A stretch of 64,000 bases of DNA from Macrostomum lignano (GCA_002269645.1 NIVC01000988.1:328405-392404), one strand, 5' to 3'; positions 11,620 to 64,000 are shown, numbered from the stretch's first letter. Numbers and translations are program-made. The notes: generated by a model not told the origin, from the sequence alone.

Positions 11620-13860
11620 TTAAGGACTCGATCGCCAAGGTAGAATAGCTACCAGAGTGAAAGCTGTGATCCTCTGATCCGAAACGGATCGAGCGAAGAC
11701 TGCCACCGCGGCCGCAGCTCGCGAAGTTGATTTCGCTGCATTTTGTAAATCAACAGAGAGCAGCGAGCCGGAAGCTCCAGTGGCTGCCAAGTAAGATGAA
11801 GATCCTGGACCGGACATCCATGTTAACTGCGTGCCCAGAGAAGAAATCGACAAGGTGAGAGCACTTAAAAAATCTTCGGCGCATATACAATAGGCTTCTA
11901 TCTACTCATGGCTGGTCCAAGAAAATTACAAAGGCTGTTGAACTCTTAAGGCGGTCACTCCAGAGCAAGTACCGCAAAATTCGATTACTGCGTTCAAAGC
12001 ATTGGCAAATTAAACAAAGAGCCAAGACCCTAAAAGATGTGATTCGAGAGTTAAGGGCCAAATGTATTTTGAATGAAGCTGCTGCATCTCGGCTGAATTT
12101 CTTGCCCTCCGATTCACTGCTTAGCAGCATTTTGCCAAGCAAGATTGCTAAGAGGACAAGAATATTCTCCCACGAAGTGCGGAAATTCGCCTCCACATTG
12201 CACTTTTACAGCCCGAAGGCCTATGCGTATGCGAGACAGTACTTTCAGCTTTCACATCCAGCTTCGCTTAGAAGATGGCTCTCGAATGCGAAATGCTTTC
12301 CAGGATTTTGTGACCAAGCCTTTCAGGAACTTTCTCGGTGACGCAGCTCCAATGATGGCCGATCCTTCGACTACTGCAACGTTGTAGCTGATGGAAATGT
12401 CACTGGAAGCGATGGTTGAGTGGAATTCAAATGAAGGCAGTTTCTTTGGCTATGTTGACAAAAAGCGATGGCAAGTCAACTGGTCAGGAGGCAACTTCAG
12501 CATTGGTAGTGATGGCAGTGGGTCTCAAGAGCTATTGGAAGCTACCTTTAGGATATTTTCTAGTGAGCGGAGTTGATGGCGAATTTCTTTCAAGTGTCGT
12601 AGAGGAATCAATCCAGCGGCTCTACCAGGTTGGCGAATTATTGCCTCGTCATTTACATGCGATGGGACTCAGCACAATATTCGAGCGATCGAGCTTCTTG
12701 GTGCCAGAATAAGCTCTCCCAATGAGATCGTTGCCTCTTTCCCACACCCCTGCGATCCCGGCATTCAGGTTTCAGCCTTCTTGGATGTGCCGCACATGCT
12801 GAAGCTGATTCGAAACCAGTGGCAGTCCCTGGGAACATTTGTTTGGCCGGACAGAGGAAATATTGATTGGAAATATGTGTGCATGTTGCAGCAAGTACAG
12901 GAGAGCCATGGACTCAGACTAGGCAATAAGCTGAGCAGGCATCACATTAACATTGCTAATTTAAAGATGAAAGTTTATTTGGCCTCACAACTTTTTAGTA
13001 AGTCGGTGGCTGACTCGTTACGATGGGTGCACAAGCAAAGCTTGGCCGGATTTAATCATTCCGATGTATTAGTGACAGCAGATTTTATTGAGCACATGAA
13101 TGATCTGTTCGATGCGTTCAACTCGAAGCGATGGTAAATTATGGGGCTAAAATGGCTCTAAGAGCTGACAACCGGCCTGACTGGATCGACTTCTCCACTG
13201 ACTCGATCCAGCTTCTCAAGAGCTTAGAAACTCCAGCTAGATTCAAAATCGTTGACACTGCAAAGAAGACAGGATTTTTAGGCTTCATCACCAATTGCCT
13301 TGCCGTTATTGCGCTTGCCAAGTATTTATTTTCAACTGGCGAATTCTTCTTTCTTTGCACTTACAAGCTGTCTCAGGATTTTCTAGAATCCATCCAGCAC
13401 TGTACTCGTATGAATGCATCTAATTGATTGTGAGATTTGCCAGTCTATTGTGTATCAATTGCCAGAGCAGTTGTGCGAAGCATGTTGAAAGTTGTCGAAT
13501 GTGCTCCGTGCAGGTCAGCTCTGACTGCCAGCTCCGAGACGCCACCAGCTTTTCGTGCCCCTTGCTCACTTGTTGCCTTGAAGAATTTTTTGAACAAGGA
13601 AGGAACTGGCGGCTCGATTTTTCCAGCAGCTATGTCTTCCTACTCAGTGCTGAGTCTGTTATTCGATGTGCCAGCTGTAACAGCCAATTCTCCAGTGACG
13701 TAGCAGTTCACGAGACTTTGCGCAAGTCGAGCAATCTGTTCCGTGAGCTTGACTCGCATTCGGCATCCGCGAGCAGCGGCATTGAGTCGCACAAGCTCCA
13801 TTTAATTCGAGTCATGACCCTGCTCTTCACAAAGATCAGAATGAAAAACTAGCTAAAGAA
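11620..13860 (+). pseudogene. Decayed P-element/THAP9-family DNA transposase
   Basis: Motifs in successive frames: FASTLHFYSPKAYAYARQYFQLSHPASLRRW; EMS..FGYVD; WKLPLGYFL; TCDG..N; DVPHMLKLIRN; KMKVYLASQLFS.SVAD; FIEHMNDLFDAFNS; KTGFLGF; TYKLSQDFLE. Several frameshifts of both signs plus in-frame stops. Candidate intron 11855-11933. Confidence 0.9.
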
Positions 13861-14603
13861 CTTTCTCGCGCAGGAAGGAGACCAGGAAGGAGGCAGAGAC
13901 TACTTCGAGCAGCAATATTTCTTAATTTATAGTATATTCGAAACCAGGTGAGCTATTTATTGACTTAACTTCTATGCTATCAGCAAAAACAAAAAGTCTC
14001 ATTTTGTCTGCAAGCGTTTTTGTACGACGGTTTTTTAGTTTTTAATAAATAAATCTAAAATAATACTGGATTTAAACTGTTAAATTGCTAGTTGCACATA
14101 AAGTTGGTTAAATGGTTAGCAATCCGTGTTCCATGGCAAAAGGCAACAATTAATACAGCGGGCCCAATGACTGAGGGGTAGGAAAGGAAGGGAAGCCAAA
14201 AATATCGATCGTGAGGGCGTGGGAGCTGGGGTGCCATTTTTCCTACTTGGAAAGAGGCACACATTTCTTGCCCCACAATGCGCAGTCTAGTTATACTTAT
14301 TGGTCTGTGAGGAATACGTCTAATTGAGACGCCATATGCTACAGGTGCCTCTTGTCTGGCCACAATGGGCAAGAAACTCTCCGAAGAGATCGCATGTCTC
14401 TGCAGTCAGCTGTCACATAACAAATCAGAAACTATCTAGCGGAAACCAAACGCCACACAGCAACAAGAATTGAGTTTCAAGCCAAGCAGAGCAAAGCAAA
14501 GCAAAACGTCGGAGCGCTGATTAAAGTCCCGGAAAATAGCGAGTAGTTGTGTGATTTCTCTGACGTCACAAACGAAATACAAATTGCCACGTTAAAGACC
14601 AGA

Positions 14604-17088: not shown

Positions 17089-44600
<27,512 letters not shown>

Positions 44601-47249: not shown

Positions 47250-49751
47250 GAGCTTGTTGCCACCCAGAATCACGTGACCGGGAGATCCTATCAGTTCCCA
47301 CAGGGTTGTAAAAAGATGACAGGTGCGGCCATAAATCAATCAAAATCGCAACAAAATGATTTGACTTTTCGCGTAGGATTAACAGAAATTAATGAAAAAA
47401 TATACATTAGAAAGCTCTTATTAAATAGAAAATGAAGATAATGAAGAGAAACCGCTAATCGCTAATCCCAAAGTACTTTTAGGGGTAAAACGCATAGCTG
47501 TCAAAGCTGTCACACGCTTGAGTGAACCCGAACAATAGGCTCTGACCTCATAAATCTTGATGGCCTGTCAAAATGATGAGAAAAAAGCTACCGCCCGCAT
47601 CCTCTCAGACCATCTGGCGCCCGCCTCAACACTGAGTGAGGCGCAGGTGGCTGTCAGACCAGCTTCGAAAGCGATGATTTATGATCCAAAAAGCTGCGCC
47701 TATGTTATTATGACTACTAGTATGACCAAACAGTATATCTAGTATAGATTCTATGACTATTCGCAGAAAAAGGATAAAAATGCCCATTGCCCACTGTTAG
47801 TAGGCTAGTAAGTTTAGAGCCCATGTGCTAGCGCGGGATTTGGAAAAAAGTGCGTCCTCATCAATTCGATTAAACGGACCTTCACTTGTAGCCTCTGAGA
47901 AATTTTCATCGGATTATCGCTGCGCTCTAAAGTGTTGACAGTCAGGCCGTGCTTCTCATCGCCAATCTTGTCATACTGACCGCGGTGTAATTGGCTGACT
48001 GGTCGATGTCGTGATTTGTCTGGCCAATGTCATTATTTGCGGTTTATAAATTCCACTCACTGCCATCCTCTTCAAGTAGCTCGTCCGGATTACTCATTAA
48101 AAACAAGTCAGTTAAAAACAAGTTTACGCTGACAGTGAAAATTTGCATTGAATGCATATACTGTAGAATGATTAAATTGATGCTCCAAGGATTAAATTGA
48201 ACTCCGCTATGCCAACTTGTGTCGACCATAGACAGAAAATTTTCAGTCTCGCAAGTCATATAATTCCGCGTATCTATGATTAAATTGAAAGCTTGCAGTA
48301 CCAACTAGGCTGCAAAAAGGAATATAGCCTATATATATGCGTAGTCTTTAAGGCTAAATTTGTATCTAACCGCACGGAATCAGGAATCAAACACGGATAT
48401 TTCAAGCAAATGACTTATCACTGATATATAAATTTTAACTGTTACTGTTTAGCCATGCAGTTGGCCAGTTCAAGACCGATAATAAAACGTATTTTAAGTT
48501 GGAACTAAAAAAATCGATTTAAATGTTTATAGATACAATGAAAAAAACAAAAATTAGTGAATACCTATTTTCGTGTAAGAATACTGTACCGTAAATTACA
48601 GATTCTATACGATAATTTTTTAATGTAGACAAACTCTTAAACAGCTGTTTTTACATATTGTCAATGCCTAGTTACATTTCATTTTCGAATAATTTGTTCT
48701 TCGTAATTGTCATTCAATTTTAGTTAACTATCCCTCATTTACAGGATTAGTTGGCCTGTAACAGACTCAAGAAACTAGTAAGTTCTCCGTTTTTAAGCTT
48801 TCTCCTAGCACTCACGCGAAGTACACTGTTTTGTTTGGACAGTTTTTTATTTTGTCTTAAATTTTAATAGACGAGTGAGATTGACAATATTCTTTATCAT
48901 ATCATGGACCGTAACGTTACTCAGTCTGGTAAGTTTTACTGATTATATGTAGATTGATGGTCGAATGTGTTTCAGTTATTAATATTTCTGGCACTTAAAA
49001 ACAATTCCTACGAAAAAAAGCTTCATGGATAGGATAGGGCAGGGTGGTTCCTTGACACTGTCATCTACTCGTACCATTTTTTTTGGCCAAAGTATGGATG
49101 CAAATATGAAAACCTGGATGCAACTTGCCTTGTCATTATAGACAATTGAAAGCACATTTGAAAAGCACATGATAAATAATTTATAAAACAAACTTATTAA
49201 AAGCGGAAGCTAATATTCATTGACCAATACCATTTAATAATAAGAATTAAATAAGATTACATAATCTTTATTCCTTCATTGTCGCCGAATTTGACTAGAT
49301 TGTCGCCGCATTTGCTTTCGCCGAATTTTTCCATGGTGAATCGCTGTTGCTAAATTTGTTTGTCGCCGAATTGGTCAGCACTGCAATGTCGCTATCGTCC
49401 AAGGAGAAACTATCTGACTCTCCCAAACTTACCTGAATTTTTTAAACACTCGGGTTGTTGTTACGAGCACATCAACCATTTTTGTCTTACATGTATTTCA
49501 CAGTAGAAAAAAGAACCATCTCTTCAAAAGAAAGAACTCTTTGGAACGTGAACAGAAGCAGCAAATATGGTCCAATGTGTGCCGATCAACACTGCGCCTC
49601 AGTGCGGCCTTGCCAAGCCTTCGGGTGTCAGCAGCACGTCGACCGACTGTGCGGGAAACATGAGGGTATGGCAAAAAATGCTTGTTCGGGTGTCCATAGT
49701 CTTCCGGTGCCACTCGGGGGAGTGAGTCTAGCTGAGGATGTCCAGCAGTTG

Positions 49752-50816
49752 CCCTGTGAAAAATGATCGCTAGCCTTTCGCCAGCTAAATAGTAGCGAAA
49801 TTTCGCCGGCGAAATGGTAACAGAATGTCACTACTATTCGCCAGCGAAATGCCAGCAAATTTTTCCTGTAAATCGCCGCTATTTTGCCAGGATTTAGCTA
49901 CCCTCTAATTTCTTTATGAATTCACTTTTATTGATTTGATTTGCACGAAAAGCATTTTTAATGTAATATTACTGTTGTTTGTATTGTAACTCCTGTTTAT
50001 GTGAGAAGTTAACCCCCCTAACCCCCTTTCTTCAGCCGAAAATAAGCTTTGAAGTATAATAAAACTGCGGCTGCGGTTTGCGCTAGGCTTGCCTTGAGCA
50101 AACCGGCTTTAGTGCCCAAGCGCGCTGCGTCTGTGGTGCGCCCCCCCGCCGCGTGTGTACGTTCTGTGTTGTTTAGGTGGGCGCCCACCCCTCCGCCGGC
50201 GGGGGGGGGGTATTTTACTCCAGCCGCGCTGCTGAGTTGGCAGTGTTTTCGCGCAGTTCTCGCAGGCCTCGTTACTGCTTTCGCTTTCGCCAACATCGGG
50301 TATTCGTGTTTTGCTTTGGGGCACTAATGTTAGATTTAGAAATATCATATGTCAATGTTTTGAAAAAAGAAATATATTAATATACTGCATTATATATTGT
50401 ACGAGCTAAACAAAGAAAAATGAAAAAAATGCTGTCATGTGCCAAATTGGCACCAACCTGGAGCTGGAGGGCTGCATGATATTTAAGTTAGTTTTGGGCC
50501 ATTACCAAGCAATGGTTTTGTATGCACTGCATTAAACTGGAACTCAATAAAATGATAGGCAACATGCAATAAGTTAAAATTTTTACATTATGTGCAGAAA
50601 ATTCATGAATTAAAACTTATAAAATGCCGTATAACTTTATACAATTCTTCATATTTTATTATTCTTGAGTGTTTTTGTCCTCAGCATTATTGGCACTGGT
50701 CTTGTTGTCACTTGATTTAATGGCCATGCAGGAAGCCTGGCGAAATTTTTGATTTCGCTGTCTGCGCTACCAAGCTAGTGTTTCGCCGGCGTTTCGCCAG
50801 CTCATTTTTCACAGGG
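49752..50816. mobile_element. 1065 bp non-autonomous DNA transposon, CMC/EnSpm-like
   Basis: Perfect 15 bp TIR CCCTGTGAAAAATGA (49752-49766 and 50802-50816), 2 bp TSD (TG), and many subterminal ttcgcc(a/g)g / ggcgaaa repeats. Confidence 0.8.
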
Positions 50817-51510
50817 TGAGGTTTGCTCACTGTCGAGGCTTGATCAGCGAAACTAGAGAAATTCGCGATCAGGTGTTCATAGTCCACTGGTGCCACATGT
50901 TGAATGTCCAGAAGCTCCGCCTGGGTGAATGTCAGTGACCAACGAAGTCAGAGCTGATGCAGACACATGTGGTCGACGTGCTACTGAAATTTGAGGGCTT
51001 GGCGAGGCCGCACTGAGGCATAGTGCTGATTGGCGCACAGGGGTGTACTGAATACACTGGCGCGGATGGGAAAAATCTGACAGAATCGTTGAATATCTCG
51101 ACAGTCCAGAGGGCTGGCGACTTGATTCTTGTTTGAGAAGGTGTGGAAAAAAATGTTAGCTCGGGTTCTTGAATTTCGCGTGACTGCGTTGCCATACATA
51201 CGCAACCTCCAAATTCAGTCGGCCGTGCAACCTAGTTTTAAGCAAGAAATGCGACTTATTTTTAAACCAAAAATGCAACTTACTTGGGGTCGCGACAGTA
51301 AAGGACTTTTTTTGGGGGAGGGATCGTGACAAAAATGATCCTTTTTTGAGGTCCCGTTAAAAACAGCCTTCTGTTGTTTTGTTTTAATGTAAGTACATTA
51401 ATACAATTCTAACTTTCCTTCTTTCTTTTCCATTTTTCTATACCTTACACTTTAACCTCAGGTGTCCTCAGGACTTCGCTTCCTGATTGGCTCCTTGCTA
51501 CCGACGAGGA

Positions 51511-54500
51511 ATGCTAAATGAATTGAACACGAAAAAACCTCTGCTGGGCAGCTGGGGTACACTTAGTTGCCTCTGGCTGCGACATGGTCTCTGTTTTTGC
51601 TTCTTTCCCTTTGTTTTTCTCCTTCCCTGCCTCTCTTTTCCCTCCTGTCACGCTTTTTTCTTTCTTATTCCCATCCTTTTTCGTCTAATTAGTTGGCCGC
51701 TTCGGCCGACTCGTCCGACTGTTGCGCATGTATGTGCGTTGTTCCGTTCCGGCACAGGAAAACAATTATCAGGGGGAATCCCCCCGTTGGTAGTTCTACT
51801 GGCAGAAAAGGTATTCCTACTGTTAATTACTACATTAGAAGAGGAAGAGCAAAATAAAGGGTAATGTTTTCCTTACAATGTTCAATTCCTTAATTCCTTA
51901 CAAAATTCATTTCAGAAGTCAGCAGGCTAGCCCTAATTCTCACTGAAAATAGATTCACTGAAGAACCCTCTGTCACCAACGTCAAAGACATTCTCACTAA
52001 TAGCGGCTTTAGGGTTGAATCGAACGTGCTGGGAAATTATGCTCAAGACATAATATCGTTCGTGCCTGATGAAATTTGTCGGTCGACAGTTCAGCAGTTG
52101 ATCATTATTGTGATCGCCAACGCTCAATATCCGAAATGCATGGATGATTTCCTGAAACTGATGACTGACGGTGGATTTTTCGACCTTCAAAAGCGCTTTC
52201 TCTTATTCTGCAGAGTTTCCAATGGTAATGAAAACACCAGCGACTTGCAGTTGCAGAAAAATTTTCTAGCAATAGTTTCAAGTACAAGAGCGCAATCGTT
52301 GGGTACAAGTTTGACGCCGAAGAGAAAATAAGAAACTTCATTAACTGGCTCGCTCAAGAAATGAACACTTGCTGGAACAATAGCTGCCTATCAGCCATGC
52401 TTAGCAGATGGTTGCCAGCTCATGATGAAGAAGATTTGTACATGTATCCAACAGGAAAATGCAAGCGACCTTTCCTACGGGACATTTTATTTCACCTTGA
52501 TAATCGAGAGCAGCAAGAAGGTAACGGCCCGATGGCAGCTGGAGCCGAGGGCCCGATGGCAGCTGCAGCCGAGAGTCCGATGAATGCGACAGTCGACAAC
52601 GACCAGATTGCTTCCCTGATTTACCCGAACAAGCGCACTCCCACCAAACCCCAAGCTCTGATCATTCTCTATTTCAACAAGAGTGCAGCGCCGTGCGAGT
52701 CTCTCCAGGCCGACTGTTTGCGGCTGATGAAATTATTCAAGTTTCGCCTTGGCTACCTCGTGACAGATATTCAAGTTGATTCAGAGAGCCAGAACGATCT
52801 TGAGGACAGAGTGAAGAGCTTCGCAAACCAACAAGATCACGGTGACTCGTGCGTCCTCATTATTTTGTCACTGTCGAACGGTCTGCTGTGTGGCCACTCC
52901 ATCATCAATCTTTTTAGCCAGATGTCGCTCAGCAAGCAGCTAAAAGGCAAACCGAGGCTGTTTCTTTTGAATGAGTGGCAGAGTGGCGCACAGACTGGCC
53001 GACTTGCTGATCCAGCCAGTCCGAGCGAAGCATTTGAAATTTTGCCAGACACTGTCAGTTCAATGGAGGACTATTGGGGCACCAGAAATGAGACATCTAA
53101 AGTTCACCCCTTTAGTGGAATGGTATTCGGCCTTGCCTCAGCAAACAATGAGACAGATGTAGATGGGAGTGATTTTGTTAGAACGCTCTGCACGACCTTT
53201 GAGAAGTTCGGTAGCACTAAAGACGTAGTGTCCATGAGTGCCATAATTAATGAAGAACTGTCAGTTTCTGCTAAAGCGTTGCCTCGCTGGATTATTCAAA
53301 CAACGAAACTTTTTTTCATCACAAATACAGGTGGACTGGAAAGTAAGTTTCCCAATCTTCTTATAACTTATTCTATTCCCTTGTACGAGCGTAGTTGAAG
53401 ATTTAGTATATTGTGATTGTGCATTATTTGGTATAATTTACATTTACATTTCATTGCCTGTGTTTCTCACAAATTTGTCTTTCTTTATTAATTTCAACCT
53501 ACAGCAACAAGTCAAAAAGTTTCACCTAATGGGCCTCAAGACAACGGTGAGAAAATTTATACTGACAGCATGAGCTACGTTCAGTTATGTACTAACTTGA
53601 AGAGTTGATATTTATAGATAACATTTGAAACTATTAAAAATTTCTAAGAAAACATTACAAATGCATTTTCAGCTTGCACCAGTGAGAGAAACAAAGCTGG
53701 TAAGTTGGAACAATCTAGAATAATTACGAGTTCTTGACATTTGAATTGTATGTGGTTCGCGACTGCATGTTGCAGAAATTTTTCCGCCTTACTTAAAGGC
53801 GCACAACTCGCTCAGCAATCACACCACACATACAGGTGACTGCATGGCGATAGGGACAAGGGGAAGGAAAGGGAGAAGGGGAAGAGGGAGAGGAGAGGGA
53901 GTTGGTGAAACAACTTGAATACTTGTTTTAGTTAGCCGAGAATTCCTAAAGGGAAAGCGATAGCGACGACAATTTATATATTTGATAAATCAATAGAAAA
54001 GGAATAAAACGTGAAAATGAAACTTTGCGTGTGTGTACAGTAATCAATGTACGCAAGGGAATAAAAGACCGCGCACGACACAGGACAACCACCCCAAACC
54101 CACGCAAGCACAAACAAGACCGCGCTAGCTCACACCACCACTGTGGGGACGGAGGAAGTGAGAGGAGAGATCAGGGAGAAATAAGGTAAGGAGGAAGGAA
54201 AAACGGGACTCGCACTACTGATCAAGACCAGTCGAGTAGGGAGCATTCCGGACCAATGTCGCCCGACCCACACTACTCGTATGACTGGCATCCAGTTCCA
54301 GAGCTGAGCAGAGTCAGCCGCCTCCTGATTAGAGGGCTTTCACAGCTGACAGGAAAGCCGGAAGGAGAAGTGGGATTGGTTGGGGAAACAATGGAGATGG
54401 GACAAGGGATCGACAACGCTCACCCAACCGCCCAGACGGTCGAAGCAATCCAAACTGCCACCACTTGTGGCGCTCCTAGTTGCCACCTTGGAACTTTAGA

Positions 54501-57283
54501 GAAACGAGTCCCCGAATTTCTACTTCCAACTTAGCCAATACAACACGCGTTCAGAGGGCTCCGTGCATTTCCGTTTTAGACTAAGTTTAGCTCAGAATGA
54601 AGTCACAATCAGATCGGGTTCACGGATCACTCGATGTTCAAGCACGAGGTCTTTGCTCAAGCCGAACTGAGAGCTACACGTATCAACAATTGATTCTGAC
54701 TAACCGACTGAGGACCCTAAAGCAGCCTGTTGTGAGGCAGATGAAGCTGATCCTCGTAAAAGCGTATTAGCTGACTCAGGAGCGAGAGCCCAAGCAGGCT
54801 GGCCGACACGCGAAGGGGAAGACGGGAAAATGAGCAATGAGCAGAAGCTCGGGTATTGAGCATTCGGGTAGCTAATAAGGGGAGATATGCAGGTCATACA
54901 GTAAAGACAACGAAGACAATATAGGAGGGAAGGCTCGAAGATAGCTGTGCACCATTTGATAAATTTCAGGCTGTGGGTCATATATCGGTTAGAACAGAGG
55001 AACATCGGTTACAGACTCTATAAACTTGCAAAACTGCAATTAGCCTACCCAAACCTACATGACTTGGGTAGAGGATCGGGAGCTACGAACGACTTCTGCT
55101 CCATCTATGAGGCTTTTCAAATAGTCGATTCTAGAACCAGAATCCGTTCTGAAATTCCAGGAAATGAAACAGTAAAATTCTCTAGCCCCTATAAACAAGA
55201 AAAGAACAGACAGTAGATAATTTGATTACATATGACAACTAACAAAATGATGGCAGAAAATCAAACACTCACGTGTAAATATCATATTGTAGCGGCAGAC
55301 GGGCCCGAAACAGACAGGGAGGCCATGCAGACAGACCGAACAGTGCATGCGTCTGCACGCTATCCCCCTGTTTGCTTTGCTGGGGTGGGCGCTCGCCCCA
55401 GACAGCTCCTGGTTTGTGACTCACGCCCCTTTGTTCGCACCTCCCCATGCTGGCTGTTCCCCTTTTACAAATAAAACAAATAAAAGCGATGCACTTCTGC
55501 TTCGTCTGGTCTAACGCTTCTTGCAGACCACTAAAATATCATATACTCCAGGAAAGAAGTATAGAAGTATAGTTTTACTACTTGGATTCACAGATATTCA
55601 GAACCGATTTGGGTCTGTAATTGGCAATTTGAAAAGCCTATTTAAACTTTTAAAAATGGGCAACGAATGAGAAATTACTGAGAAATTCTCCGACTCCAAC
55701 TGACCGTCTATCACATCACTTTGCCGTCTATTGAGTGTACTGAATCTAACGCATTGCAGCCTTCTTTGACGCTAGTAAAAAGTACTTAATACGAGTATGT
55801 TCTCTACAAAATTTCAGGTCGAACTGGTGTTGCCTTGATTTTCACAGAGTATTTATTCGATGCTGTCAGAAACTACCAAACGTTTCTTGAGTACGCAAGC
55901 TTTAAAGTACACGTGGACCGCACACGTGGTGACATGAAATCGTTAAGAAAAGCGTTCGATCGTGAGAAAGACCATTTTCAAAAAGACCTCGTAGTTATTG
56001 TTGTCGTGCGCCACCGTCATAGCGATGGGGATCTGTTGCGAATAATCGGCGATATTGGTATCACGAGATCGACAGAAGCTCGCCACAGCACACTGCTTAT
56101 CCATTGCGAGGTCCATGACACCGAAGAATCTTCTCAGAGGGAGTTACAGGTAGCCCGGCAAGTAGAAAACTTGCCTGACAAGTTCAGCATGGCCTGTTTC
56201 TTTGGCAATGAAGAGGAAGTCAAAGAATTTCTTGACTCATTGCTCCAAGATGCGAGGATGTCAGAAAGCCTGAATGGAATTTCCGTTGTTGGCAGAAATT
56301 TTCAAGACGGGCGCACCTCTCAAAGAAACTTCGTGTTCAAGCGTAATGATGAAATCCCAAAATGGGCAACGGGAAGAGTGATTAAATGGCTAGGCAACTA
56401 TACTATCAAATCAAGTGTTCAACGATCTACTACTGCGCAGGACGACACCGTTCAGTCAGAAGTTGTAGTTGATGAGTTCCGACTGTCCGAAACGCGGAAG
56501 AGATGGCACCCAAAGCTCCCCCCAGCAATCGAATCCACTTCAGAATGTGTCAGAGCACCCAGAGCACTCATCGTGCACAATGTTATCTTCAAAGAGAAAC
56601 TAAGCGCTAGGCTCGGTAGCCAGCATGACTGTCAAAGGCTGACAGAGAGTCTCCTAAGACTCGGCTACAAGGTCTCGATCAGGTCGAATCTCAACGGAGC
56701 TGAAATTAAACACGAAGTTAAGAAGTTTTCCGAAGAGTCTGACGACGGCAGGTCATCTGTCGTTGCGTTTATGTCTCACGGACGCCTCGGCGAAGTCTTC
56801 GGCTCTGATGAAGAGCCTGTAGGAGAAAAAGATGTATTACAACTTTTCTCAGATGAATCAGGGACAAAAGACAACTTTCAGCTAGCCATATTTCAGTGCT
56901 GTCGTGTTCCAGGTCAATTACCAGACGAGGTGTCGTGTCTGGCCTTCTACCCGGGTATGATAATCGCTCACTCTACCCTGCCAAATGACTTCAGTCTGCG
57001 TGTGAAGAGCAAGGGCAGCCGGTTCATCCAGAGCTTCTGCACAGTGCTGGATCTTTTTCCTCACAATGACATTGTAACGATCATTCCTCTGGTGAATTAC
57101 TTAATGCTCAACTCGATTTATCAAGGATTCAGTCAGCAGCCTTGGTGGTTTGTTCAAAGCGGAAAAAGGTTCTGGCCCAAAGTTCAAGGTGCTGGTGAAA
57201 ATTCACAAAATCCGTCAGAATGCAACAATGCTTTTGACTTACAGGAGTTACAAAAAATTATCGAATCAGATCACCAGGATTAG
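51511..57283 (+). CDS. Multi-caspase-fold protein gene 1: degenerate module A1, pseudo-caspase B1, microexon linker, module A2, active-type caspase C1
   Basis: Predicted exons 51511-51556 (tentative), 51916-53342 (one frameshift at the A run 52257-52261), 53505-53546, 53673-53699 and 55818-57283; all introns phase 1 and in frame. C1 has FMSHG (His 56777) and FQCCRV (Cys 56900). B1 has ILSL and LLNEW in place of SHG and QAC. Confidence 0.75.
52361..53342 (+). CDS. Caspase-like (peptidase C14 fold) pseudo-protease segment B1 of gene 1
   Basis: PQALII..DCLRLMKLFKFRLGY..FANQQDHGDSCVLIILS..LKGKPRLF..DGSDFVRTLC; donor GAA A|gtaagt. The ORF reads through to a stop at 53398 if unspliced. Confidence 0.88.
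55277..55544. mobile_element. Possible solo-LTR-like or other short insertion (246 bp) in a gene 1 intron
   Basis: Starts TGTAGCGG (55288), contains two AATAAA, and is flanked by the 11 bp direct repeat aaatatcatat (55277-55287, 55534-55544). No clean CA end. Confidence 0.4.
55818..57283 (+). CDS. Terminal exon of gene 1: module A2 + caspase C1 with intact catalytic dyad
   Basis: PRALIVHN..ARLGSQHD..LGYKV..VVAFMSHG..IFQCCR..MIIAHST..SLR..GSRFIQSFC. Confidence 0.93.
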
Positions 57284-58986
57284 CCTGCAGTTGAGGATCG
57301 TGGAGCAGCCCCTGTTCCAGGTCATTGATACCCTGTGTGGATCATCGGGCAGAGCATGATGATCTTAATGCGGTTGCTTCACTAACTTCTAATGGGATTC
57401 GTCTGACTGATGACGCTCCTGATGCTCCATATAATTCTAAAAGTTGTGCTGGAGTGGACAGCCCTATCCAACTGCGTTGAGTATAATTAATTAATTAACG
57501 TTGATTAATGCGCAAAAGTAAGAGTAAATTTATTTATACTATAATATAGCACGTTTTTTAATAATTCTCACCCATTGTTAATTGTTGTAATCCAATTATA
57601 GGTAAATGTAATACAAATCAGAAATTCTCCATAAAGTACACTGGCAGATCTAATGAGGGATCGAAGCTACTCCGTACGTTGCTTGGTCCACTACACCCCA
57701 AGCACAGCAGCACCTGGTACATTAAATAGACTATTGTATTTCAAATATTCCCATTCCTACGGACATATATTTCTTGCCATGGCTTGCCCCTCTCGGTTGT
57801 TCTGCGAACGCGTCCGCGCAAAGTCTAGCTAGATCTCTTTTTGTCTGTGCTTTTGTCTGCGTCGCTATATATATATGCTCCATATAATTCCATATAATTA
57901 ATTCCATATAATATATGGCTGAGACTCAGACACCGGGTCCTTGGTCGGTTTAGGGGCAGGCATAGAAACCGTCCAGCCAAACCGTCTAGCTAGAGCACAT
58001 AAAATTGAAATTGAAATAAAAAATGATTGCAATTGAATAGCCGCGTGTAAGCCGAAAACACAAAAGGGACAAAATGTGTTTATTGAATCCTTGTTTTCTA
58101 TTCGCACAATATCTTTCACAACGCTCGACGATTTGCTTCTACTTCTTTACACATTTATCGTTTAGTTCGTGTGGTTGATAAAAATACTGTACATATTTTA
58201 TTATTTATACCGGAAATTTTCAACACATTTTTCTTGAACTAATTTTTAATTTGTATTTAAATCCTTTATACCAAATTTAAGCTCAGATCGCGTCATAAAC
58301 TTAGCTAAAAACAATTGTTTAAAATAATTTTCACATTCTTGCTATTTGAGAATTAATCTGACGTCAACTACTTGAACTAATAACGTTCCGCAACTATTGC
58401 GATGACTTTTTAATAGAAAGTTTTTACTGCTCAATGTATGAAGCTTAACGTATTTAGTTAATAATTATTAGTACTATTTTTTTCAGCCAGCTATCATTAA
58501 CAATCCTCGGCTAGCTCTTGATTATGAGCAATTTACGGTTAATTATTTGTGAAGTTCCACTGTCCTGCTGTTTCTGTCGCTTAACAGTTTTTTTCTAACA
58601 ATACAGCAAAAAATGCTTCATCATTCACCTCAAACCGTTTCAATTGACTTTCATTTTCTACGAGCAGAAACGTGTTAAATAGAAACTAAATTTAGATAGA
58701 GATTTAGGTATATTGATTTAGCTGTTTCAAAATGCTAAGACAGTTCGAAGTCAAAAGATAAATCGAGAGCACACAAATCAACAGTTTTCTAAAATAAAAA
58801 TCACTCGTAAAATCACTTTATGCACTGTCAGGTAGTTCAGGCAAGTGTTTTGTACTCGTACTGCAAACAGCTAAATTTCATAACAATTTGCTACCGAATT
58901 TATGCCCCTTTTCAGCGAGAATTTTTCAAAGGCAACTTGAGAGATTTAAAACAAATAAAAACATCCGTTGATTTCTATCAGAAAAC

Positions 58987-61506
58987 ATGACGAAAGACGC
59001 TTCAACTTTTATTGGTAAGGGGTTCGCTTTCTTCATAAATTTTCTATAGCTGACGAAAGATCTATAAAATACGTATACTTGAATAAACGTTTAAGCCGAA
59101 ACTTTTAGAACGATCGTATGGCAACCGCCCAAAACGAGACAATTTTTTTAATTTTTACCCTTTCAGATCATCGCCGACTGCTGCTGGTCTTCGCTGATGA
59201 ACACAAAGACATGCTGATAAATTATACCGAGTTTATGGAGAGTAAATGCGGATTTTTTAGGAAGACATTTCCCCTCGCAAACATTTCTGACGGCTTTGCT
59301 GAACTCGACAGCGGTCCAGTCATTCAAGTTGTCTGCGCCGTCGTCTGCTCGGAGACATCCGCATGCAACATGGAAGACTTCCTGAAGCCTCTTATTGCTC
59401 GGTTTGGGAAAGATGTCGATCAGCTGCTGCTGTACTGCAGAGTCTGTGATGGCAACCCAAATGAGAAGGATGAAGAATTAAAAAGTAAATTCAACGCCAG
59501 TGGATTCGAATACAAAAATTCGACAATTTCTTACATTGCTGACAGTTCTGACAATATTAGAAAGTTCCTAAGTGACAGCCTAATCAAACAGAAGACCAAG
59601 CAATGGAATGCCGAAACTTGTGCAGCTGATGTTCTTTACAACATTGAGGGTTTTGAAAAATTGTGCGTACAAAAGACAAAGAATTTTTTGCGACACATCA
59701 CGGAACCACATACGTCTGGGCAATCTGGCGCCATTTCATTCGCTGAGCCGTTTACCAATCATATCAACACACAGATCTCCGACAATTCGTTGATTTATCC
59801 TAATAGTCGTGAAACTTTTCCGAAGGCTCTTATCATTTTAAACATCTACCCAGAAAATAATATCAGCAAAGCAATGCTCACGGACTGGAAGCGTCTGCTG
59901 TGGCTGTTCGACAAACTGCAGTTCAAAGTCACAGATGTGCAAACCGACGCCAGTACTGAGAACGCAGCAGAAACCAGTGTGAAGAATTTTGCAAACTCTG
60001 AATACCATGGAGATTCGTGCGTCTTAGTGATTCTGTCTGAGCGCAAGCTCAGCCAAAACTTTATTCGCAAAACCAGCGACTCTATGGCAGCTGGCGAAAA
60101 CTCCAGGACAAGCCCAGACTGATCATCCTGCAGCACTGGGAGACCAAACCGCCAAGTGCCGATGGCGCGCCCGCTGGACTTTCCCAGTTCGTGCCGGCTA
60201 TTGTTGACTCAATCCGGACCCGCCGCAAACACACAAGCCTGAAGTGCGAGTTCATCCGCATGGCGGAATGATTTGGTGCCAGCCGGCTGCTGCAGACTCC
60301 GACACTGATGACGGCAGCTCACTAGTTTGGGTGATCTGCGACACCTTCATCAAATATTCAGCCACTGAGGACGTGGTGTCAATGATTTCGCTGATCAATG
60401 AGAAGCTGAAGGCCTCGCCTCCACTGTGGTGTGTGCAGACTACCAAGTATTTCTTCATCACAGACACCAGTCGTCCATTGAATAACTCACGTGAGTACCT
60501 TTTTTGAGCTTATTCAAATTATACCTCGTATTTTAATATTCCATAACTTATCTTTCGACTGTGAAATCGTTTTGTCGAATTGTGCAGTTGCTCTGTGATT
60601 CGGAATTACGTGCATTATTACTAACCAGAACAGGTAGAAAAGAGCAAATGTATTCGTAATTACGTTAAATCAGCCAGCACAAAAAGGTAGCACAATAAGC
60701 TAATGAGGGTCAGTCGATGGAAAATCTTAAACACTATTTCAGTCTAAAAGCTGCCTCATTCCATCGATAAAATGTCTCTTAAAAAACCTTTTTTCAGTCG
60801 AGCCACCTTCCACTAAAGAAAGCGCAAAAGCGGGTCTCGCCTTAATAATTAATAACACATTTAAGAACGACTCCAAATTTGTAAGAGAAGGAAGCGACAT
60901 CGATCGTGAAAAATTGAAAAGTACTTTCAAAAAGTTTGGTTACGACACTAAAATTGCGGAGGATCTCAGTGCAGAGAAAGTTCGATCTGAAGTGAAACAA
61001 TTTGCCGATGATAGCCGTCACGGTGACACCTGCATTGTGGTCATCATGTCCCACGGAAAACTGGGAAAAATCATTGGAGTCGATCACTCGGAAGCGTCGG
61101 AAACGAAAATTCTTAAAATACTGAACGATAGCAAAAGCCTTTCAGGAAAGAAAAAACTCGTCATATTTCAGCTATGCCGAGATCACCCAGATGGAAGCCC
61201 ATCGAGCAATTCTGACCATCCCACTCGACTGGTCTACCCGGACATGATCGTGGCGCACTCGACAAGCATAGGTGAAAAAAGCTTTCGCAGCACAGATCAA
61301 GGCAGCCGGTTTGTGAATAGCCTGTGCGATGCTCTTGACAAGTTCGGGAAAGGCTCAGACATCGTCTCGCTCATCAGTGCCATCAACTGCATTATGATGA
61401 GAAGTTTTTACGATAAACTAGTACAATTAAAGATGACACCCAGCTGCCCTTCTGGCTGGTGCAGACCACGGGCCCTTTTGTTCTCGCCAATCTTACGGAT
61501 GGCTGA
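58987..61506 (+). CDS. Multi-caspase-fold protein gene 2: module A3, pseudo-caspase B2, active-type caspase C2 (three apparent frameshifts)
   Basis: Exons 58987-59014 (MTKDASTFI G|gtaagg), 59167-60490 and 60798-61506; both introns phase 1. B2 has HGDSCVLVILSE and KPRLIILQHW. C2 has VREGSDID, VIMSHG (His 61052), IFQLCRD (Cys 61175) and GSRFVNSLC. Frameshifts near 60055-60072, 60227-60229 and 61413-61415. Confidence 0.78.
60798..61506 (+). CDS. Caspase catalytic domain exon (C2) of gene 2
   Basis: GLALIINNTF..REGSDIDREKLKSTFKKFGY..CIVVIMSHG..KKLVIFQLCR..DMIVAHSTSIGEKSFR..QGSRF. The C-terminal LPFWLVQTT strand is in the shifted frame. Confidence 0.92.
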
Positions 61507-63375
61507 GAAGTCGCTCGCACTGGTTCCGATAAGGGCTTTGGCATCCGAATAAGGGCAAAATGCATGACAGACACTCGCAGTGTTAATTTTTTTATTTATA
61601 TCACTAATTCAATTTTAGCTTCTAAAACATTGTTTTTAAACAATCATAAGCCCTACCGTCAGTAGAATTTTTTTGACATTTTGCGTTTTTCAGTCGGTGC
61701 TTGCGCGATATTTATTGGTTTATAGACGCACAATTTCTGATTGTTGCAAATTATAGTGCCTCTACTTTTACCATGGCCAAATGTGCCAATGGATTGATTC
61801 TGTTCTACGCGGCCACCCACATTGAAATAAAAAAATTAAGAAATAAAAATACCAGGGAGCGGGCACCCTAGCTGCAGTCACTGCAAATGTACAAGCTTAG
61901 ATTGCTTCCTTCATCATCACAATCACAATATACTAAATCTTCATCACAATATACTAAATCTCTAAGGTTTGTTTGTTTTACCGGTATCACAATATACTAA
62001 ATTTCTAACGTTTGTCTGTCTTATACTTTAAATCTCTAAGGTATGTCTGTCTGACCGGTATTCAGTCTACAGCCTGAATGCCTGAACCGTTTTTTTTAAC
62101 ATGCTTTATTCAATTGCAAATTCTTGTGAGATTTTGTGGATTTAATTGTGAGGCAGAATCCTTATAAACTATGTATATTACTTATAACAGTAGTTAAACC
62201 CGAGTTTTAATCACAGCCAATCAGAAATTTTCTTCCCCATTTGTTTAAATTCTCCAAGCAAATCAAATTCTTTTGTTATAATTTTAGTAATTGTTAAAAT
62301 GCGTCCCACCTTCCCCAAATTTTCTGTATATATGGAATCAGGTTGACGCTAGAAAAATATAACCTCGGCGATCGTTCTCAATAATTGCCTTTAACTATTC
62401 TTGCGAGAATCTTTTAGCGAAACAAATCTAAATTTGGCTAAGACTTATCTCGTTATTTCTTTCATAAGATAGGGAAACCAGAGGTCGTGGAGACCCAAAA
62501 CCAGGACTCTAGATAGGGAAAACCAGAGGTCGTGGAGACCAGAACTGGGATCTGGTTAGGAACTTGAGGTCGTGGAGCCCAAGAATAGAAACCTGAGTAG
62601 GGAGATCGAGATCGTACAGATCCTAAGAAAGCCGTACAGGCCAATAATAGGCATTAGGCATTAAGAGATTAGGTATTAGGGAAGTAGATTAGTTACCGCT
62701 GGACACCCTTGATCCCTGGAAAACGCTAGACTTTCGGACTGAACTAGTAGGGAATTAGACAGTGTCTTACCGCTCGCGGCACTACACTCTATCGCAAGGT
62801 TTCTAGGAAATCGTGTGAAATTAGAAATCTCTAGGAAAGAGTCATAGATTAGGGCTGCCAACGCTACTCAAAGTAGATATATTAGTGACAATTTATAGGA
62901 TAGAGAAATTAGAACTAAAGGACTGCAGCAAATTGGTGAGATAATTTCAGTAGGAACCAGAAGGGCTAGCACAATTGCATTGAAAAATTCGAATGGGAAA
63001 GTGTTAAATATTCGAAAAACGAGTTTTCCCAATGCTTTCAATCGGAGGCTAGAAAAGGTCAAAATCTCGACTAACTGAATAGCAATTCCAATTAAGATTG
63101 CGCCACAACTTTTCTCTTTTCACTGTGTAGGCCTCAATACAGGCTGCCGTGTGCAGCGGAGAGGAAAATACACAGTGGCTGCGTGTGTACATTCTGACCC
63201 TGGCTCTGACTCCATAGAAAATTGCTATTTATAGATCTCACTCAACTGTGCATTGGCTCTGCCTGCATACAACCTGTGCACACTGAGCAAGCCTATCACT
63301 GCATGAACATGTATTTGACTGCAGTGCCGAAGCATATATGGCAGATTTTTGTGCTCTCCGATCAGTAGGTGAATA

Positions 63376-63446
63376 GCCGAGGTGTAGGCACTAGGATTAG
63401 GTTTAGTCTCGGCATAAGGTCCAAGGTTCGAGTCTGCCTCCTCGGC
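63376..63446 (+). pseudogene. tRNA-like sequence (degenerate tRNA pseudogene or SINE head)
   Basis: Perfect 7 bp acceptor stem GCCGAGG/CCTCGGC, 71 nt long, with B-box GGTTCGAGTC. The T-stem and anticodon stem are broken. Confidence 0.5.
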
Positions 63447-63949
63447 GGATGATTAAAATCAAATAAATTTATTCATATATAGCTTGGACCTCAACTAATT
63501 GGAATATTTTTGTTGAATTAGCAAAGCAAAGCCAGCTACAGTGAGAGGCCTGCAAGTTAATGCATTGAAATTAAAAACCAAGCCAATGCCCAGGACTAAT
63601 TGAATAGCGACACCCGCCCCTCAATTTCAATATCAAAAATGTGTTGCGCAACCTTTCAACGCTTGTAGCTCTCCACGCGAGTGTAGAGAACCAATGCTAT
63701 AGTTGGCACTGAGTTATGATGCAATACAATTGCATCGACAGTCAGAATGCTTCTCAATCAAAAAGAAACTGTTTGAACTTTAAAAAACGGGGCAAAAAAT
63801 CGAGTTTTTCGAATATTTAATCCCGAAAAAAATTAAGCATTCCTTTGCAAAAAAATGGTGTACCAGCGCTCCATAAATACGCATCGAATGCAGAAAACCC
63901 CACAAAATTCTGACTACGCAGAGTCAAGTTAAACGAAGGTTCCTATAGA

Positions 63950-64000
63950 TATGATAGATAGATAGATAGGATAGTAGTAGTAGGTAGTAGGTAGGTAGGT
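63950..64000. repeat. (GATA)/(GTAG) simple repeat running off the window end
   Basis: Directly visible. Confidence 0.85.

What the first reader, a model, noticed from the sequence alone, without database searches (positions are those of the whole stretch)
51511..61506. Tandem multi-caspase-fold genes: pseudo-caspases fused in cis to an active caspase, with no death-fold prodomain
Seen: gene 1 = A1-B1-(microexons)-A2-C1 and gene 2 = A3-B2-C2. C domains keep the SHG and QxCR dyad, B domains are full-length caspase folds without the dyad, and A domains are compact modules with caspase-like strand order. No CARD/DED/DD-like helical prodomain is apparent. Known: caspases activate by dimerisation, and the pseudo-caspase cFLIP regulates caspase-8 as a separate heterodimer partner. 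Inference: a single-chain regulator-plus-protease architecture in which internal pseudo-domains pre-dimerise with, activate or auto-inhibit the catalytic domain, or act as baits for pathogen proteases or inhibitors. I do not know of a described family with 3-4 caspase folds per chain; the tandem divergent paralogues suggest a fast-evolving immune or cell-death locus.
Basis: partly seen in the sequence, partly recalled or inferred. Interest (0 to 1): 0.9.

Follow-up and report, generated by a model that had tools for sequence, protein, structure and literature searches.

The report
Flatworm multi-domain pseudo-caspase/caspase gene pair
Two neighbouring genes of the flatworm Macrostomum lignano each encode one long protein that strings an inactive caspase copy, one or two small probably caspase-derived modules and one active caspase together; this is a new, more elaborate variant of the "inactive plus active caspase in one chain" design already described in corals, mussels and mammals.

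Summary
The window is Macrostomum lignano DNA. Positions 51.5-61.5 kb carry two tandem genes with the stated order: gene 1 is A1-B1-(two microexons)-A2-C1 and gene 2 is A3-B2-C2. C1 and C2 are caspase domains that keep SHG, QxCR and the P1-Asp-binding arginines. B1 and B2 are full-length caspase folds that have lost all of these. No death-fold or other Pfam domain is present.

The A module (~150 aa, five beta-alpha units) is found only in M. lignano among 1.84 billion representative proteins. Profile comparison links it weakly but specifically to the caspase domain, with a Cys kept at the catalytic-Cys column. It does not match TIR or receiver-domain profiles.

- This copy carries four single-base deletions that break the frames. 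A ~99% identical duplicate locus has both genes intact.
- The "pseudo-caspase fused to active caspase" design is already published (coral caspase-X, mammalian caspase-16, mussel double-CASc caspases).

GenBank gene models built from RNA-seq transcripts, together with divergent paralogues, support single chains.

Most likely function: an intramolecular FLIP/caspase-8-like pseudo-heterodimer, with A as a caspase-derived prodomain. This is inferred, not shown. I rate it a new variant of a known kind, of moderate interest.

The parts
51511..51556 (+). Putative first coding exon of gene 1 (MLNELNTKKPLLGSW + 1 base). Unverified.
   Evidence: The ATG and a GT donor at 51557 are phase-compatible with the acceptor at 51915/51916. 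No transcript or annotated protein covers it.
51916..52360 (+). A1 module of gene 1 (compact alpha/beta domain; core SRLALIL...NFINWLAQE, 51921-52360). It is interrupted by a 1-nt deletion at 52257.
   Evidence: 98% match to P0004 and P0006. The duplicate locus L003 reads A1+B1 in one frame. The deletion context is shown.
52361..53342 (+). A1-B1 linker and B1 pseudo-caspase domain (core 52616-53326). The His column reads ILSLSNG (52862-52882) and the Cys column reads LLNEWQS (52964-52984).
   Evidence: Pfam Peptidase_C14 E 1.2e-10, profile positions 4-229 of 233. Alignment to caspase-3. Coordinates.
53505..53546 (+). Microexon 1 of gene 1 (linker, ...TSQKVSPNGPQDN).
   Evidence: GT-AG borders and phases reproduce P0001 exactly.
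53673..53699 (+). Microexon 2 of gene 1 (linker, ACTSERNKA).
   Evidence: GT-AG borders and phases reproduce P0001 exactly.
55818..56560 (+). A2 module (core 55826-56251; retained Cys in LLIHCEV at 56093-56113) and the A2-C1 linker.
   Evidence: Same ORF as C1. A-N versus A-mid hhalign Prob 97.4%. A versus caspase profile Prob 65-71%.
56561..57283 (+). C1 active-type caspase domain and C-terminal tail, with the stop codon at 57281-57283. SHG at 56768-56785, QCCR at 56888-56908, beta6 WWFVQSGKRFW at 57143-57175.
   Evidence: Pfam E 1e-30. PDB caspase-3 E 6e-11. Alignment. Coordinates.
58988..59015 (+). First coding exon of gene 2 (MTKDASTFI + 1 base).
   Evidence: Matches the N-terminus of the intact paralogue P0005. 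GT donor at 59016 and acceptor at 59166.
59167..59789 (+). A3 module (core 59172-59588; retained Cys in LLLYCRV at 59424-59444) and the A3-B2 linker.
   Evidence: Single ORF with the N-terminal half of B2. AlphaFold model has five beta-alpha units, pLDDT 73.
59790..60490 (+). B2 pseudo-caspase domain, broken in this copy by 1-nt deletions at 60096 and 60236. The His column reads VILSERK and the Cys column reads LQHWET.
   Evidence: Three-frame reading. The intact 95% identical P0005 is.
60798..61506 (+). C2 active-type caspase domain (SHG 61043-61060, QLCR 61163-61183, beta6 FWLVQTTGPFVL 61450-61485). A 1-nt deletion at 61414 shifts the last strand into frame 1, and the stop codon at 61504-61506 lies in that frame.
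   Evidence: Pfam E 5.9e-29. Frame analysis. P0005 and P0006 read through in frame.

Best explanation
This is a tandem pair of Macrostomum lignano genes from a lineage-restricted caspase subfamily. The building block of the subfamily is [A module + caspase-fold domain], encoded in one exon. A is a ~150-aa alpha/beta domain and is most likely a shrunken, inactivated derivative of the caspase fold. An ancestral [A-caspase] unit, still seen as the two-domain protein P0010, was duplicated head to tail and fused. This gave [A-B]-[A-C], where B lost the His/Cys dyad and the Asp-binding arginines and C kept them. Gene 2 later lost its middle A.

Proposed mechanism (inferred, not shown):
- B pairs with C inside the same chain through the canonical beta6 dimer interface. 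The pairing would resemble cFLIP-L with procaspase-8, or the two domains of coral caspase-X.
- The result would be a one-active-site pseudo-heterodimer whose activity is set by B and by the linkers. Recruitment to a death-fold platform would not be needed.
- The A modules take the place of a CARD/DED prodomain, as interaction or autoregulatory modules.

The copy in this window carries four frameshifting single-base deletions. It is either a mis-polished or a decaying duplicate of an intact locus elsewhere in the same assembly.
For: Shown:
- The organism and the transcript-based gene models.
- The caspase identity of B and C and the status of their catalytic residues. Foldseek matches the P0005 model to (pro)caspases at E 1e-10 to 1e-11 and target-normalised TM 0.70-0.84; the output does not say which domain aligned.
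- A+B and A+C are each in one exon in the intact copies. The [A-B]/[A-C] junction in P0007 is a 73-nt intron.
- The same A-B-A-C architecture is kept in paralogues that share only 21-55% identity.
- B is as conserved among paralogues as C (36-52% versus 35-55%), which argues that the pseudo-enzyme is under selection.
- The beta6 motif P-x-W-x-[VIL]-Q-[TS]-x-[KG]-x-F is shared by B and C. It is among the best-conserved blocks in their alignment.
- The A profile finds only 7 proteins in 1.84e9, all from M. lignano, including A-C (P0010) and A-B'-A (P0011).
- A versus caspase profile: Prob 70.6%, E 3.9e-5, 136 columns. Against the C-only profile (Prob 65%) the alignment runs in register from beta1 to alpha4. 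The A Cys falls on the catalytic Cys column in 8 of 9 copies.
- Controls for that comparison: reversed A 0.2%, TIR 0.2%, receiver 0.1%.
- The AlphaFold model of P0005 has pTM 0.54 although 28% of its residues are below pLDDT 50. That is more than one 215-aa domain alone could give, so at least two domains are probably placed relative to each other.

Precedent: in HeLa cells a caspase-X construct with only the active domain killed more effectively than full-length caspase-X. The authors read this as negative regulation by the inactive domain (PMC4715348).
Against: - No interface could be inspected. The tool returns no coordinates and no PAE, so B-C pairing rests on motif conservation, a pTM argument and analogy.
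- The A-caspase homology is weak. Prob falls to 15% (A-N only), 1.4% (A-mid only) and 36% with extended boundaries.
- Foldseek of the A model returns only generic flavodoxin, receiver and SIS folds at E >= 3e-3, with no caspase in the top 50.
- The transcript evidence is short-read assembly reported in a paper. I did not see the reads.
- In this window the chains are interrupted by four frameshifts. Three of them are not homopolymer-length changes, so this copy may not make the full proteins.
- There are no expression, activity or phenotype data.
Confidence: 0.55

Rival explanations
1. The copy in this window is a degenerating duplicate (two pseudogenes or truncated genes). The functional genes are the intact copies on contig NIVC01000269.1 (locus L003).
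For: All four frameshifting 1-nt deletions are in the window copy and none is in L003, over about 5.1 kb of coding sequence. Three of the four remove a unique base, not a homopolymer base, which is less typical of PacBio consensus error. Coding substitutions between the copies are 20 nonsynonymous to 5 synonymous. The sequenced DV1 line carries extra duplicated chromosomes, with 180 Mb of duplicated blocks at 95% identity or more (PMC5730564).
Against: The assembly is PacBio/Canu polished with short reads. Short reads map ambiguously in 99% identical duplicates, so residual indel errors are expected. Noncoding DNA between the copies also has 14 indels. The other four coding indels are multiples of three (3, 3, 6 and 3 nt), so frame preservation has mattered in both copies. 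Outside the A2 patch, gene 1 is nearly identical to the intact copy. This rival concerns only this copy and does not affect the architecture.
Confidence: 0.4
2. A is not caspase-derived. It is an unrelated flavodoxin-like or TIR-like adaptor domain, so the proteins hold only two caspase folds (B and C) plus novel prodomains.
For: Foldseek of the A3 model gives only generic flavodoxin, receiver and SIS hits with TM 0.35-0.5. Pfam and a PDB sequence-profile search find nothing. The hhalign probability depends on which sequences are included. UniProt names the A-B-A fragment P0008 'TIR domain-containing protein'.
Against: The TIR profile (four sequences confirmed as TIR by Pfam) gives Prob 0.2% against A, and the receiver profile gives 0.1%. 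Caspase profiles give 65-71% in the correct register. Rotated versions of the A alignment always recover the same register. A Cys followed by R, E, K or N sits on the catalytic Cys column in 8 of 9 A copies. The A-mid copies keep a His just after beta3.
Confidence: 0.35
3. [A-B] and [A-C] are made as separate proteins, for example by spliced-leader trans-splicing at the A2 exon or by internal initiation. They would then act in trans, like cFLIP and caspase-8.
For: M. lignano uses SL trans-splicing, and its transcriptional units are often multi-gene precursors (PMC5730564). In gene 1 the two halves are 2.5 kb apart. I saw no long-read cDNA.
Against: The annotation pipeline cut units at experimentally supported trans-splice and poly(A) sites, yet it kept P0001, P0005 and P0007 as single ORFs. 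The A2-C1 exon begins in phase at an acceptor and has no ATG before residue ~45 of A2. In P0007 the junction is a 73-nt intron, and in gene 2 it is a 307-nt in-phase intron.
Confidence: 0.12
4. The inactive modules (A and B) are decoys or baits for pathogen proteases or caspase inhibitors, which would make this an immune sensor locus.
For: The family is lineage-restricted and its paralogues are highly divergent. Ten substitutions, all nonsynonymous, cluster in 180 nt of A2, on the loops following beta2, beta3 and beta4. These are the equivalent of the caspase active-site face. The two copies are otherwise 99% identical.
Against: There are no infection, expression or interaction data. The patch could be a gene-conversion tract or relaxed constraint in a dying copy. 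Ten of ten nonsynonymous is only marginally unusual under neutrality (about 0.06 by my estimate, assuming roughly three quarters of random changes are nonsynonymous).
Confidence: 0.1

Closest known systems
Coral caspase-X (Acropora millepora AmCaspase Xa-Xd; Moya et al. 2016, PMC4715348)
   Same: One polypeptide carries an N-terminal caspase domain that lacks the His and Cys, followed by an active caspase domain. There is no CARD or DED. It is a multi-copy family, and one A. digitifera gene prediction has four caspase domains. The authors modelled the two domains as a FLIP/caspase-8-like pair through beta6.
   Different: Caspase-X was reported as possibly coral-restricted, and the flatworm genes are very probably an independent origin (phylogeny not run here). 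The flatworm proteins add one or two compact A modules and show a duplicated [A-caspase] unit. The coral protein has cDNA and cell-death assay data, and the flatworm proteins have none.
Mammalian caspase-16 (Eckhart et al. 2025, PMC12198278)
   Same: The prodomain arose by duplication of caspase-domain exons and lost the catalytic site, while the C-terminal domain keeps it. A single-nucleotide frameshift pseudogenises some copies (human CASP16P), as may be the case for this window copy.
   Different: It has two folds, not three or four, and sits in a different caspase clade and lineage. Its prodomain is a recognisable full caspase-like fold, whereas A is much reduced.
cFLIP-L / procaspase-8 heterodimer
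   Same: A pseudo-caspase lacking the dyad pairs with an active caspase and tunes its activity. This is the working model for B with C.
   Different: cFLIP is a separate gene product recruited through DEDs at the DISC. Here the partners are covalently linked and no death-fold domain is present.
Bivalve caspases with two CASc domains (Mytilus coruscus, PMC10967218)
   Same: These are expanded, tandemly arrayed lophotrochozoan caspase genes with duplicated CASc domains and frequent loss of active-site residues.
   Different: They are known only from domain counts. No A-like module was reported and no relationship to the flatworm genes was tested.

Membership tests
Caspases (MEROPS C14A; Pfam PF00656 Peptidase_C14) | Caspase (hemoglobinase-type) alpha/beta fold with p20-like and p10-like parts | tested here: met
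   Pfam hits for B1, C1 and C2 and for P0005 and P0007 with two matched stretches each. Foldseek of the P0005 model against (pro)caspase-7, caspase-9, CED-3 and Sf-caspase-1 gives E ~1e-10 and TMt 0.70-0.84. For A the result is only inconclusive (hhalign Prob 65-71%).
Caspases (MEROPS C14A; Pfam PF00656 Peptidase_C14) | Catalytic His (SHG) and Cys (QACxG) dyad | tested here: met
   Met for C1 (MSHG, QCCR) and C2 (MSHG, QLCR). Not met for B1 and B2 (L/E at the His column, W at the Cys column). Not met for A (Cys column kept in 8 of 9 copies, His not kept).
Caspases (MEROPS C14A; Pfam PF00656 Peptidase_C14) | P1-aspartate pocket: the two Arg and the Gln (caspase-3 R64, Q161, R207) | tested here: met
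   C1 and C2 keep all three by alignment with caspase-3. The B domains lack both Arg.
Caspases (MEROPS C14A; Pfam PF00656 Peptidase_C14) | Asp-directed proteolytic activity | not testable with these tools
   This needs recombinant protein and peptide substrates.
In-cis pseudo-caspase + caspase proteins (caspase-X / caspase-16 type architecture) | Inactive caspase domain N-terminal to an active one in the same polypeptide | tested here: met
   Transcript-based GenBank ORFs P0001, P0005 and P0007. Exon and phase analysis.
In-cis pseudo-caspase + caspase proteins (caspase-X / caspase-16 type architecture) | Common descent with coral caspase-X or mammalian CASP16 | not tested
   No phylogeny was run. 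The A module, which marks the flatworm family, is absent outside M. lignano, so an independent origin is likely.
In-cis pseudo-caspase + caspase proteins (caspase-X / caspase-16 type architecture) | Inactive domain contacts and modulates the active domain | not testable with these tools
   Only indirect evidence is available: the shared beta6 motif and pTM 0.54 for the three-domain model.
TIR domain (for module A; suggested by the UniProt name of P0008) | Sequence or profile similarity to TIR (Pfam PF01582/PF13676) | tested here: not met
   No Pfam TIR hit at E <= 10 in P0008, P0007, P0005 or six isolated A modules. hhalign of A against a 4-sequence TIR profile gives Prob 0.2%.
Death-fold initiator caspases (CARD or DED prodomain) | CARD, DED or DD domain N-terminal to the caspase domain | tested here: not met
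   No such Pfam hit in the window ORFs or the full-length paralogues. The predicted N-terminal module is alpha/beta, not a helical bundle.

The most novel reading that the evidence does not exclude
The A module is a previously unrecognised minimal derivative of the caspase fold. It keeps the old catalytic-Cys position and works as a new kind of caspase prodomain. On this reading, gene 1 encodes four caspase-derived folds in one chain ([A-B]-[A-C]). The chain would fold into a self-contained, death-fold-independent activation or sensor unit. The vestigial active-site face of A would be under diversifying selection as a ligand or bait surface.
Probability: 0.25. Interest if true: 0.7.

Novelty: new variant of a known kind. 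Interest (0 to 1): 0.45.

Why it matters
Caspase activation is normally explained by recruitment of monomers through CARD/DED prodomains, followed by dimerisation. Proteins that hard-wire a pseudo-caspase partner to the active domain have now turned up in corals, in mammals and here in a flatworm. The lineages are far apart, so the origins are probably independent, although no phylogeny was run. That would suggest a recurrent evolutionary route to a pre-dimerised or self-restrained protease.

The flatworm version is the most elaborate of these. Its reduced A module may show how far a caspase fold can shrink and still be reused as a regulatory domain.

M. lignano is a practical system for testing this. 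A transgenesis method has been published for it (PMC5730564), and RNAi is routine to my knowledge. The role of each module could therefore be tested in vivo, which is not practical in corals.

A published survey of lophotrochozoan caspases reported only a kinase-prodomain caspase as unusual in M. lignano (PMC11463336). This family therefore appears to have been overlooked.

Tried and rejected
- TIR hypothesis for A, prompted by UniProt's name for P0008. Rejected: no Pfam TIR hit and hhalign Prob 0.2%.
- PDB sequence-profile search and Pfam scan with the A alignment. Only noise was found, including DUF7909 at E 0.05-0.09 and Peptidase_M9_N at 0.03.
- Foldseek of the A3 model against the PDB. 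It returned only generic flavodoxin-like folds and does not discriminate.
- Extending A by about 50 residues to capture a possible alpha5/beta6 (for example KLCVQKTKNF, which resembles the B/C motif WCVQTTKYF). This lowered the hhalign probability to 36% and did not extend the alignment. It remains an unproven idea.
- BLASTP of gene 1 against itself. It found no internal repeats because the modules are too divergent.
- My first guess for the position of the B2 frameshift (~60045) was wrong. Comparison with P0005 and L003 places it at 60096.
- The third large homologue search used an alignment that contained human caspase-3. It returned only vertebrate caspase-3, so it gave no information on related flatworms.
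- Exact-protein look-ups found only the GenBank contigs. No independent transcript assemblies turned up.
- Searching the literature for the six locus tags found nothing.
- The 2.1-kb intron and the intergenic spacer have no other copies in the held sequences, so they gave no sign of a transposon.

Full report
**What is in the window.** The 482-aa ORF at 55835-57283 is 100% identical to part of GenBank protein P0001 (838 aa, 'hypothetical protein BOX15_Mlig007987g1', Macrostomum lignano). The window lies on contig NIVC01000988.1 of assembly GCA_002269645.1 (Mlig_3_7). It is therefore flatworm nuclear DNA. The ORF list from the bacterial-code tool was used only as a frame map.

**Checking the observation.**
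- Pfam Peptidase_C14 matches B1 (ORF 52361-53398, E 1.2e-10, profile positions 4-229 of 233). It also matches C1 (E 1e-30) and C2 (E 5.9e-29).
- C1 is closest to caspase-3, caspase-7 and CED-3 among solved structures (E 6e-11).
- In an alignment with human caspase-3, C1 and C2 keep SHG and QxCR. They also keep the three residues that hold the P1 aspartate.
- The four B domains examined have L/E/E/Q at the His column and W/W/Y/W at the Cys column. They lack both arginines.
- The two microexons (53505-53546, 53673-53699) and the A2 exon acceptor (55817/55818) have GT-AG borders and matching phases. Spliced together they reproduce P0001 residue for residue.
- A2 and C1 share one uninterrupted ORF. 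So do A3 and the first half of B2.
- The B2-to-C2 junction (60490|60798) is in phase.
- No CARD, DED, DD or other Pfam domain is found in the window ORFs or in the full-length paralogues.

In this window the chains are not continuous.
- Comparison with in-frame copies shows four 1-nt deletions. They lie at 52257 (between A1 and B1), 60096 and 60236 (inside B2) and 61414 (before the last strand of C2).
- GenBank therefore annotates only B1-A2-C1 (838 aa) and a 325-aa remnant of gene 2 here.
- A second locus in the same assembly is about 99% identical to window 48984-64000, through exons, introns and spacers alike. This is L003, NIVC01000269.1:185432-207965.
- L003 carries both genes intact. A1+B1 are in one frame and A2+C1 in one frame. 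A3+B2 are in one frame and C2 is in one frame.
- Its gene 2 is the annotated 691-aa protein P0005, with the order A-B-C.
- Over 10.3 kb the two copies differ in coding sequence by 25 substitutions and 8 indels. Four of these indels are in-frame (3, 3, 6 and 3 nt). The other four are the frameshifts, and all of those are in the window copy.
- In noncoding sequence the copies differ by 36 substitutions and 14 indels.
- Three of the four frameshifts delete a unique base and not a homopolymer base.
- The sequenced DV1 line has extra duplicated chromosomes. The PacBio assembly was polished with short reads, which map ambiguously in such duplicates (PMC5730564).
- I cannot decide between residual assembly error and real decay of this copy, and put it near even odds.
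- The true gene 2 start is the ATG at 58988, in a 28-nt first exon. It is not the ATG at 59118.
- The proposed gene 1 start at 51511 is phase-compatible but has no support beyond that.

**Are the modules on one mRNA?**
- The GenBank proteins are ORFs of RNA-seq-based transcript models. The gene boundaries were cut at experimentally supported trans-splice and poly(A) sites (PMC5730564).
- P0001 joins B1 to A2-C1. P0005 joins A-B to C. P0007 (1017 aa, another locus) joins A-B to A-C.
- In P0007 the two halves are separated by only a 73-nt intron.
- The A2-C1 exon starts at an acceptor and has no ATG until about 45 residues into A2.
- This is good indirect evidence for single chains, but I saw no reads or long cDNAs.

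**The family.**
- A profile of six A modules was searched with HMMER against 1.84 billion representative proteins. It found seven proteins, all from M. lignano.
- Besides the A-B-A-C and A-B-C proteins, these include P0010 (580 aa). P0010 is A followed directly by an active caspase with SHG and QACR.
- They also include P0011, which is A, a pseudo-caspase and the start of another A.
- The repeating unit is therefore [A + caspase fold]. Gene 1 is two such units in tandem.
- A second tandem pair exists on contig NIVC01000896.1 (L002). It consists of a P0002-like A-B-A-C gene followed by P0007.
- Gene 1 is most similar to the P0002 group (C 55% identity). Gene 2 is most similar to P0007 (B 52% identity). 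The two pairs are thus old paralogous blocks, and gene 2 has lost its middle A.
- Module identity among paralogues:

| Module | Identity among paralogues |
|---|---|
| A-N | 21-36% |
| A-mid | 34-41% |
| B | 36-52% |
| C | 35-55% |

- The inactive B is thus kept as well as the active C. This argues for a selected pseudo-enzyme role.

**What is A?**
- AlphaFold gives five beta-alpha units for A3 (pLDDT 73). The same pattern appears in the full-length P0005 model.
- Foldseek finds only generic flavodoxin, receiver and SIS folds (E >= 3e-3, TM 0.35-0.5). No caspase or TIR structure is in the top 50.
- Pfam and PDB sequence searches are empty.
- Profile-profile comparison is more informative. Nine A modules against the flatworm B and C domains plus human caspase-3 give Prob 70.6%, E 3.9e-5, over 136 columns.
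- Against the C domains plus caspase-3 only, they give Prob 65% over 145 columns. That alignment runs in register from beta1 to alpha4.
- The A motif [FYH]-C-[REKN] falls on the catalytic Cys column in 8 of 9 copies.
- Controls were low. Reversed A gave 0.2%, a TIR profile 0.2% and a receiver-domain profile 0.1%.
- Receiver against caspase gave 2.6% and TIR against caspase 0.2%. Rotated A alignments always re-found the native register.
- The signal is fragile, however. It is 15% for A-N alone, 1.4% for A-mid alone and 36% with extended boundaries.
- A-N and A-mid are clearly homologous to each other (97.4%).
- I conclude that A is probably (about 60%) a reduced, inactivated caspase-derived domain, and that it is not a TIR domain. 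UniProt's name for P0008 could not be reproduced.

**Mechanism.**
- Shown: one active-type caspase domain per chain. It is preceded by a conserved full-length pseudo-caspase and by one or two A modules, with no death-fold domain.
- Inferred: B pairs with C in cis through beta6.
- Three observations support the inference. First, the motif P-x-W-x-[VIL]-Q-[TS]-x-[KG]-x-F is shared by B and C, and it is among the most conserved blocks between them.
- Second, B is conserved as strongly as C.
- Third, the three-domain model has pTM 0.54 with 28% of its residues disordered. That is hard to reach unless at least two domains are placed confidently relative to each other. Neither coordinates nor PAE were available to confirm this.
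- The C domains have short inter-subunit linkers. To my knowledge this would suit activation by pairing and not by cleavage, but that is inference.
- The role of A, whether interaction prodomain, autoinhibitor or bait, is open.

**Comparison with what is known.**
- The general design is published. Coral caspase-X has an inactive and an active caspase domain in one chain. A HeLa cell-death assay showed stronger killing by the active domain alone, and the authors built a FLIP/caspase-8-like model. One Acropora digitifera gene prediction has four caspase domains (PMC4715348).
- Mammalian caspase-16 has a prodomain made by duplication of caspase-domain exons, with loss of the catalytic site (PMC12198278).
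- Four Mytilus coruscus caspases have two CASc domains (PMC10967218).
- A survey of lophotrochozoan caspases noted only a kinase-prodomain caspase as unusual in M. lignano. It reported TIR-caspases in an annelid and did not mention this family (PMC11463336).
- The flatworm genes are thus a new and more elaborate variant of a known kind. The new elements are the lineage-specific A module and the duplicated [A-caspase] unit. The origin is probably independent, but no phylogeny was run.

**Verdict.**
Single-chain regulator plus protease is plausible and has precedent. The novelty claim is overstated, and the immune role is untested.
- Interest is moderate (0.45). The most novel reading not excluded is four caspase-derived folds forming a self-contained activation or sensor unit, with a fast-evolving A surface. 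I give that about 25%.

Noticed in passing
window 55934-56114 (A2 module): There are ten substitutions relative to the 99% identical duplicate locus L003, and all are nonsynonymous (M>V, K>E, R>C, H>Q, L>W, G>R, T>A, T>I, H>Y, H>Y). They lie on the loops after beta2, beta3 and beta4, including the residue next to the retained Cys. A1+B1 (1.4 kb) and the C1 catalytic domain have no substitutions at all. This could be a gene-conversion tract or diversifying selection.
   Followed up: partly
window 56326, 60854, 60872, 61213: There are four in-frame indels (3, 3, 6 and 3 nt) between the window and L003 inside coding sequence. These contrast with the four 1-nt frameshifts that are all in the window copy.
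   Followed up: partly
L002 (NIVC01000896.1:286839-311032) 4656-8242 and 10970-14191: This is a second tandem pair of the same family, a P0002-like A-B-A-C gene followed by P0007 (A-B-A-C). It is paralogous, block for block, to the window pair. GenBank annotates only the C part (P0003, 318 aa) of the first gene.
   Followed up: partly
L003 2923-8288: The intact duplicate of gene 1 (A1+B1 in one frame, A2+C1 in one frame) has no called gene on record at this locus, although the neighbouring gene 2 copy (P0005) is annotated.
   Followed up: no
P0006 and P0008 (UniProt, older ML2 assembly): P0006 (1101 aa) is a chimeric model that fuses pieces of gene 1 and gene 2. P0008 is named 'TIR domain-containing protein', but no TIR similarity could be reproduced with Pfam or hhalign.
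   Followed up: yes
window 1100-3436, 5556-6747, 25104-28815, 30529-31519, 42769-44094: These are large tandem arrays. They comprise a 23-bp satellite (about 100 and about 50 copies), a 238-bp repeat array, (ACAG)n of about 1 kb and (TAGT)n of about 1.3 kb. They account for the composition-skew spikes in the first 45 kb of the window.
   Followed up: no
window 17100-17741 and 20593-21228 (+ strand): These ORF pieces carry ankyrin repeats (E 1e-6) and a TRP_2 domain (E 1e-29). They are probably exons of a TRP-family ion channel gene upstream of the caspase genes.
   Followed up: no
window 33313-34410 (- strand): A 365-aa ORF hits Pfam Cornifin (E 5e-13), but it lies on a 24-bp tandem repeat array (33573-34236). 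It is most likely a repeat-derived spurious match.
   Followed up: no
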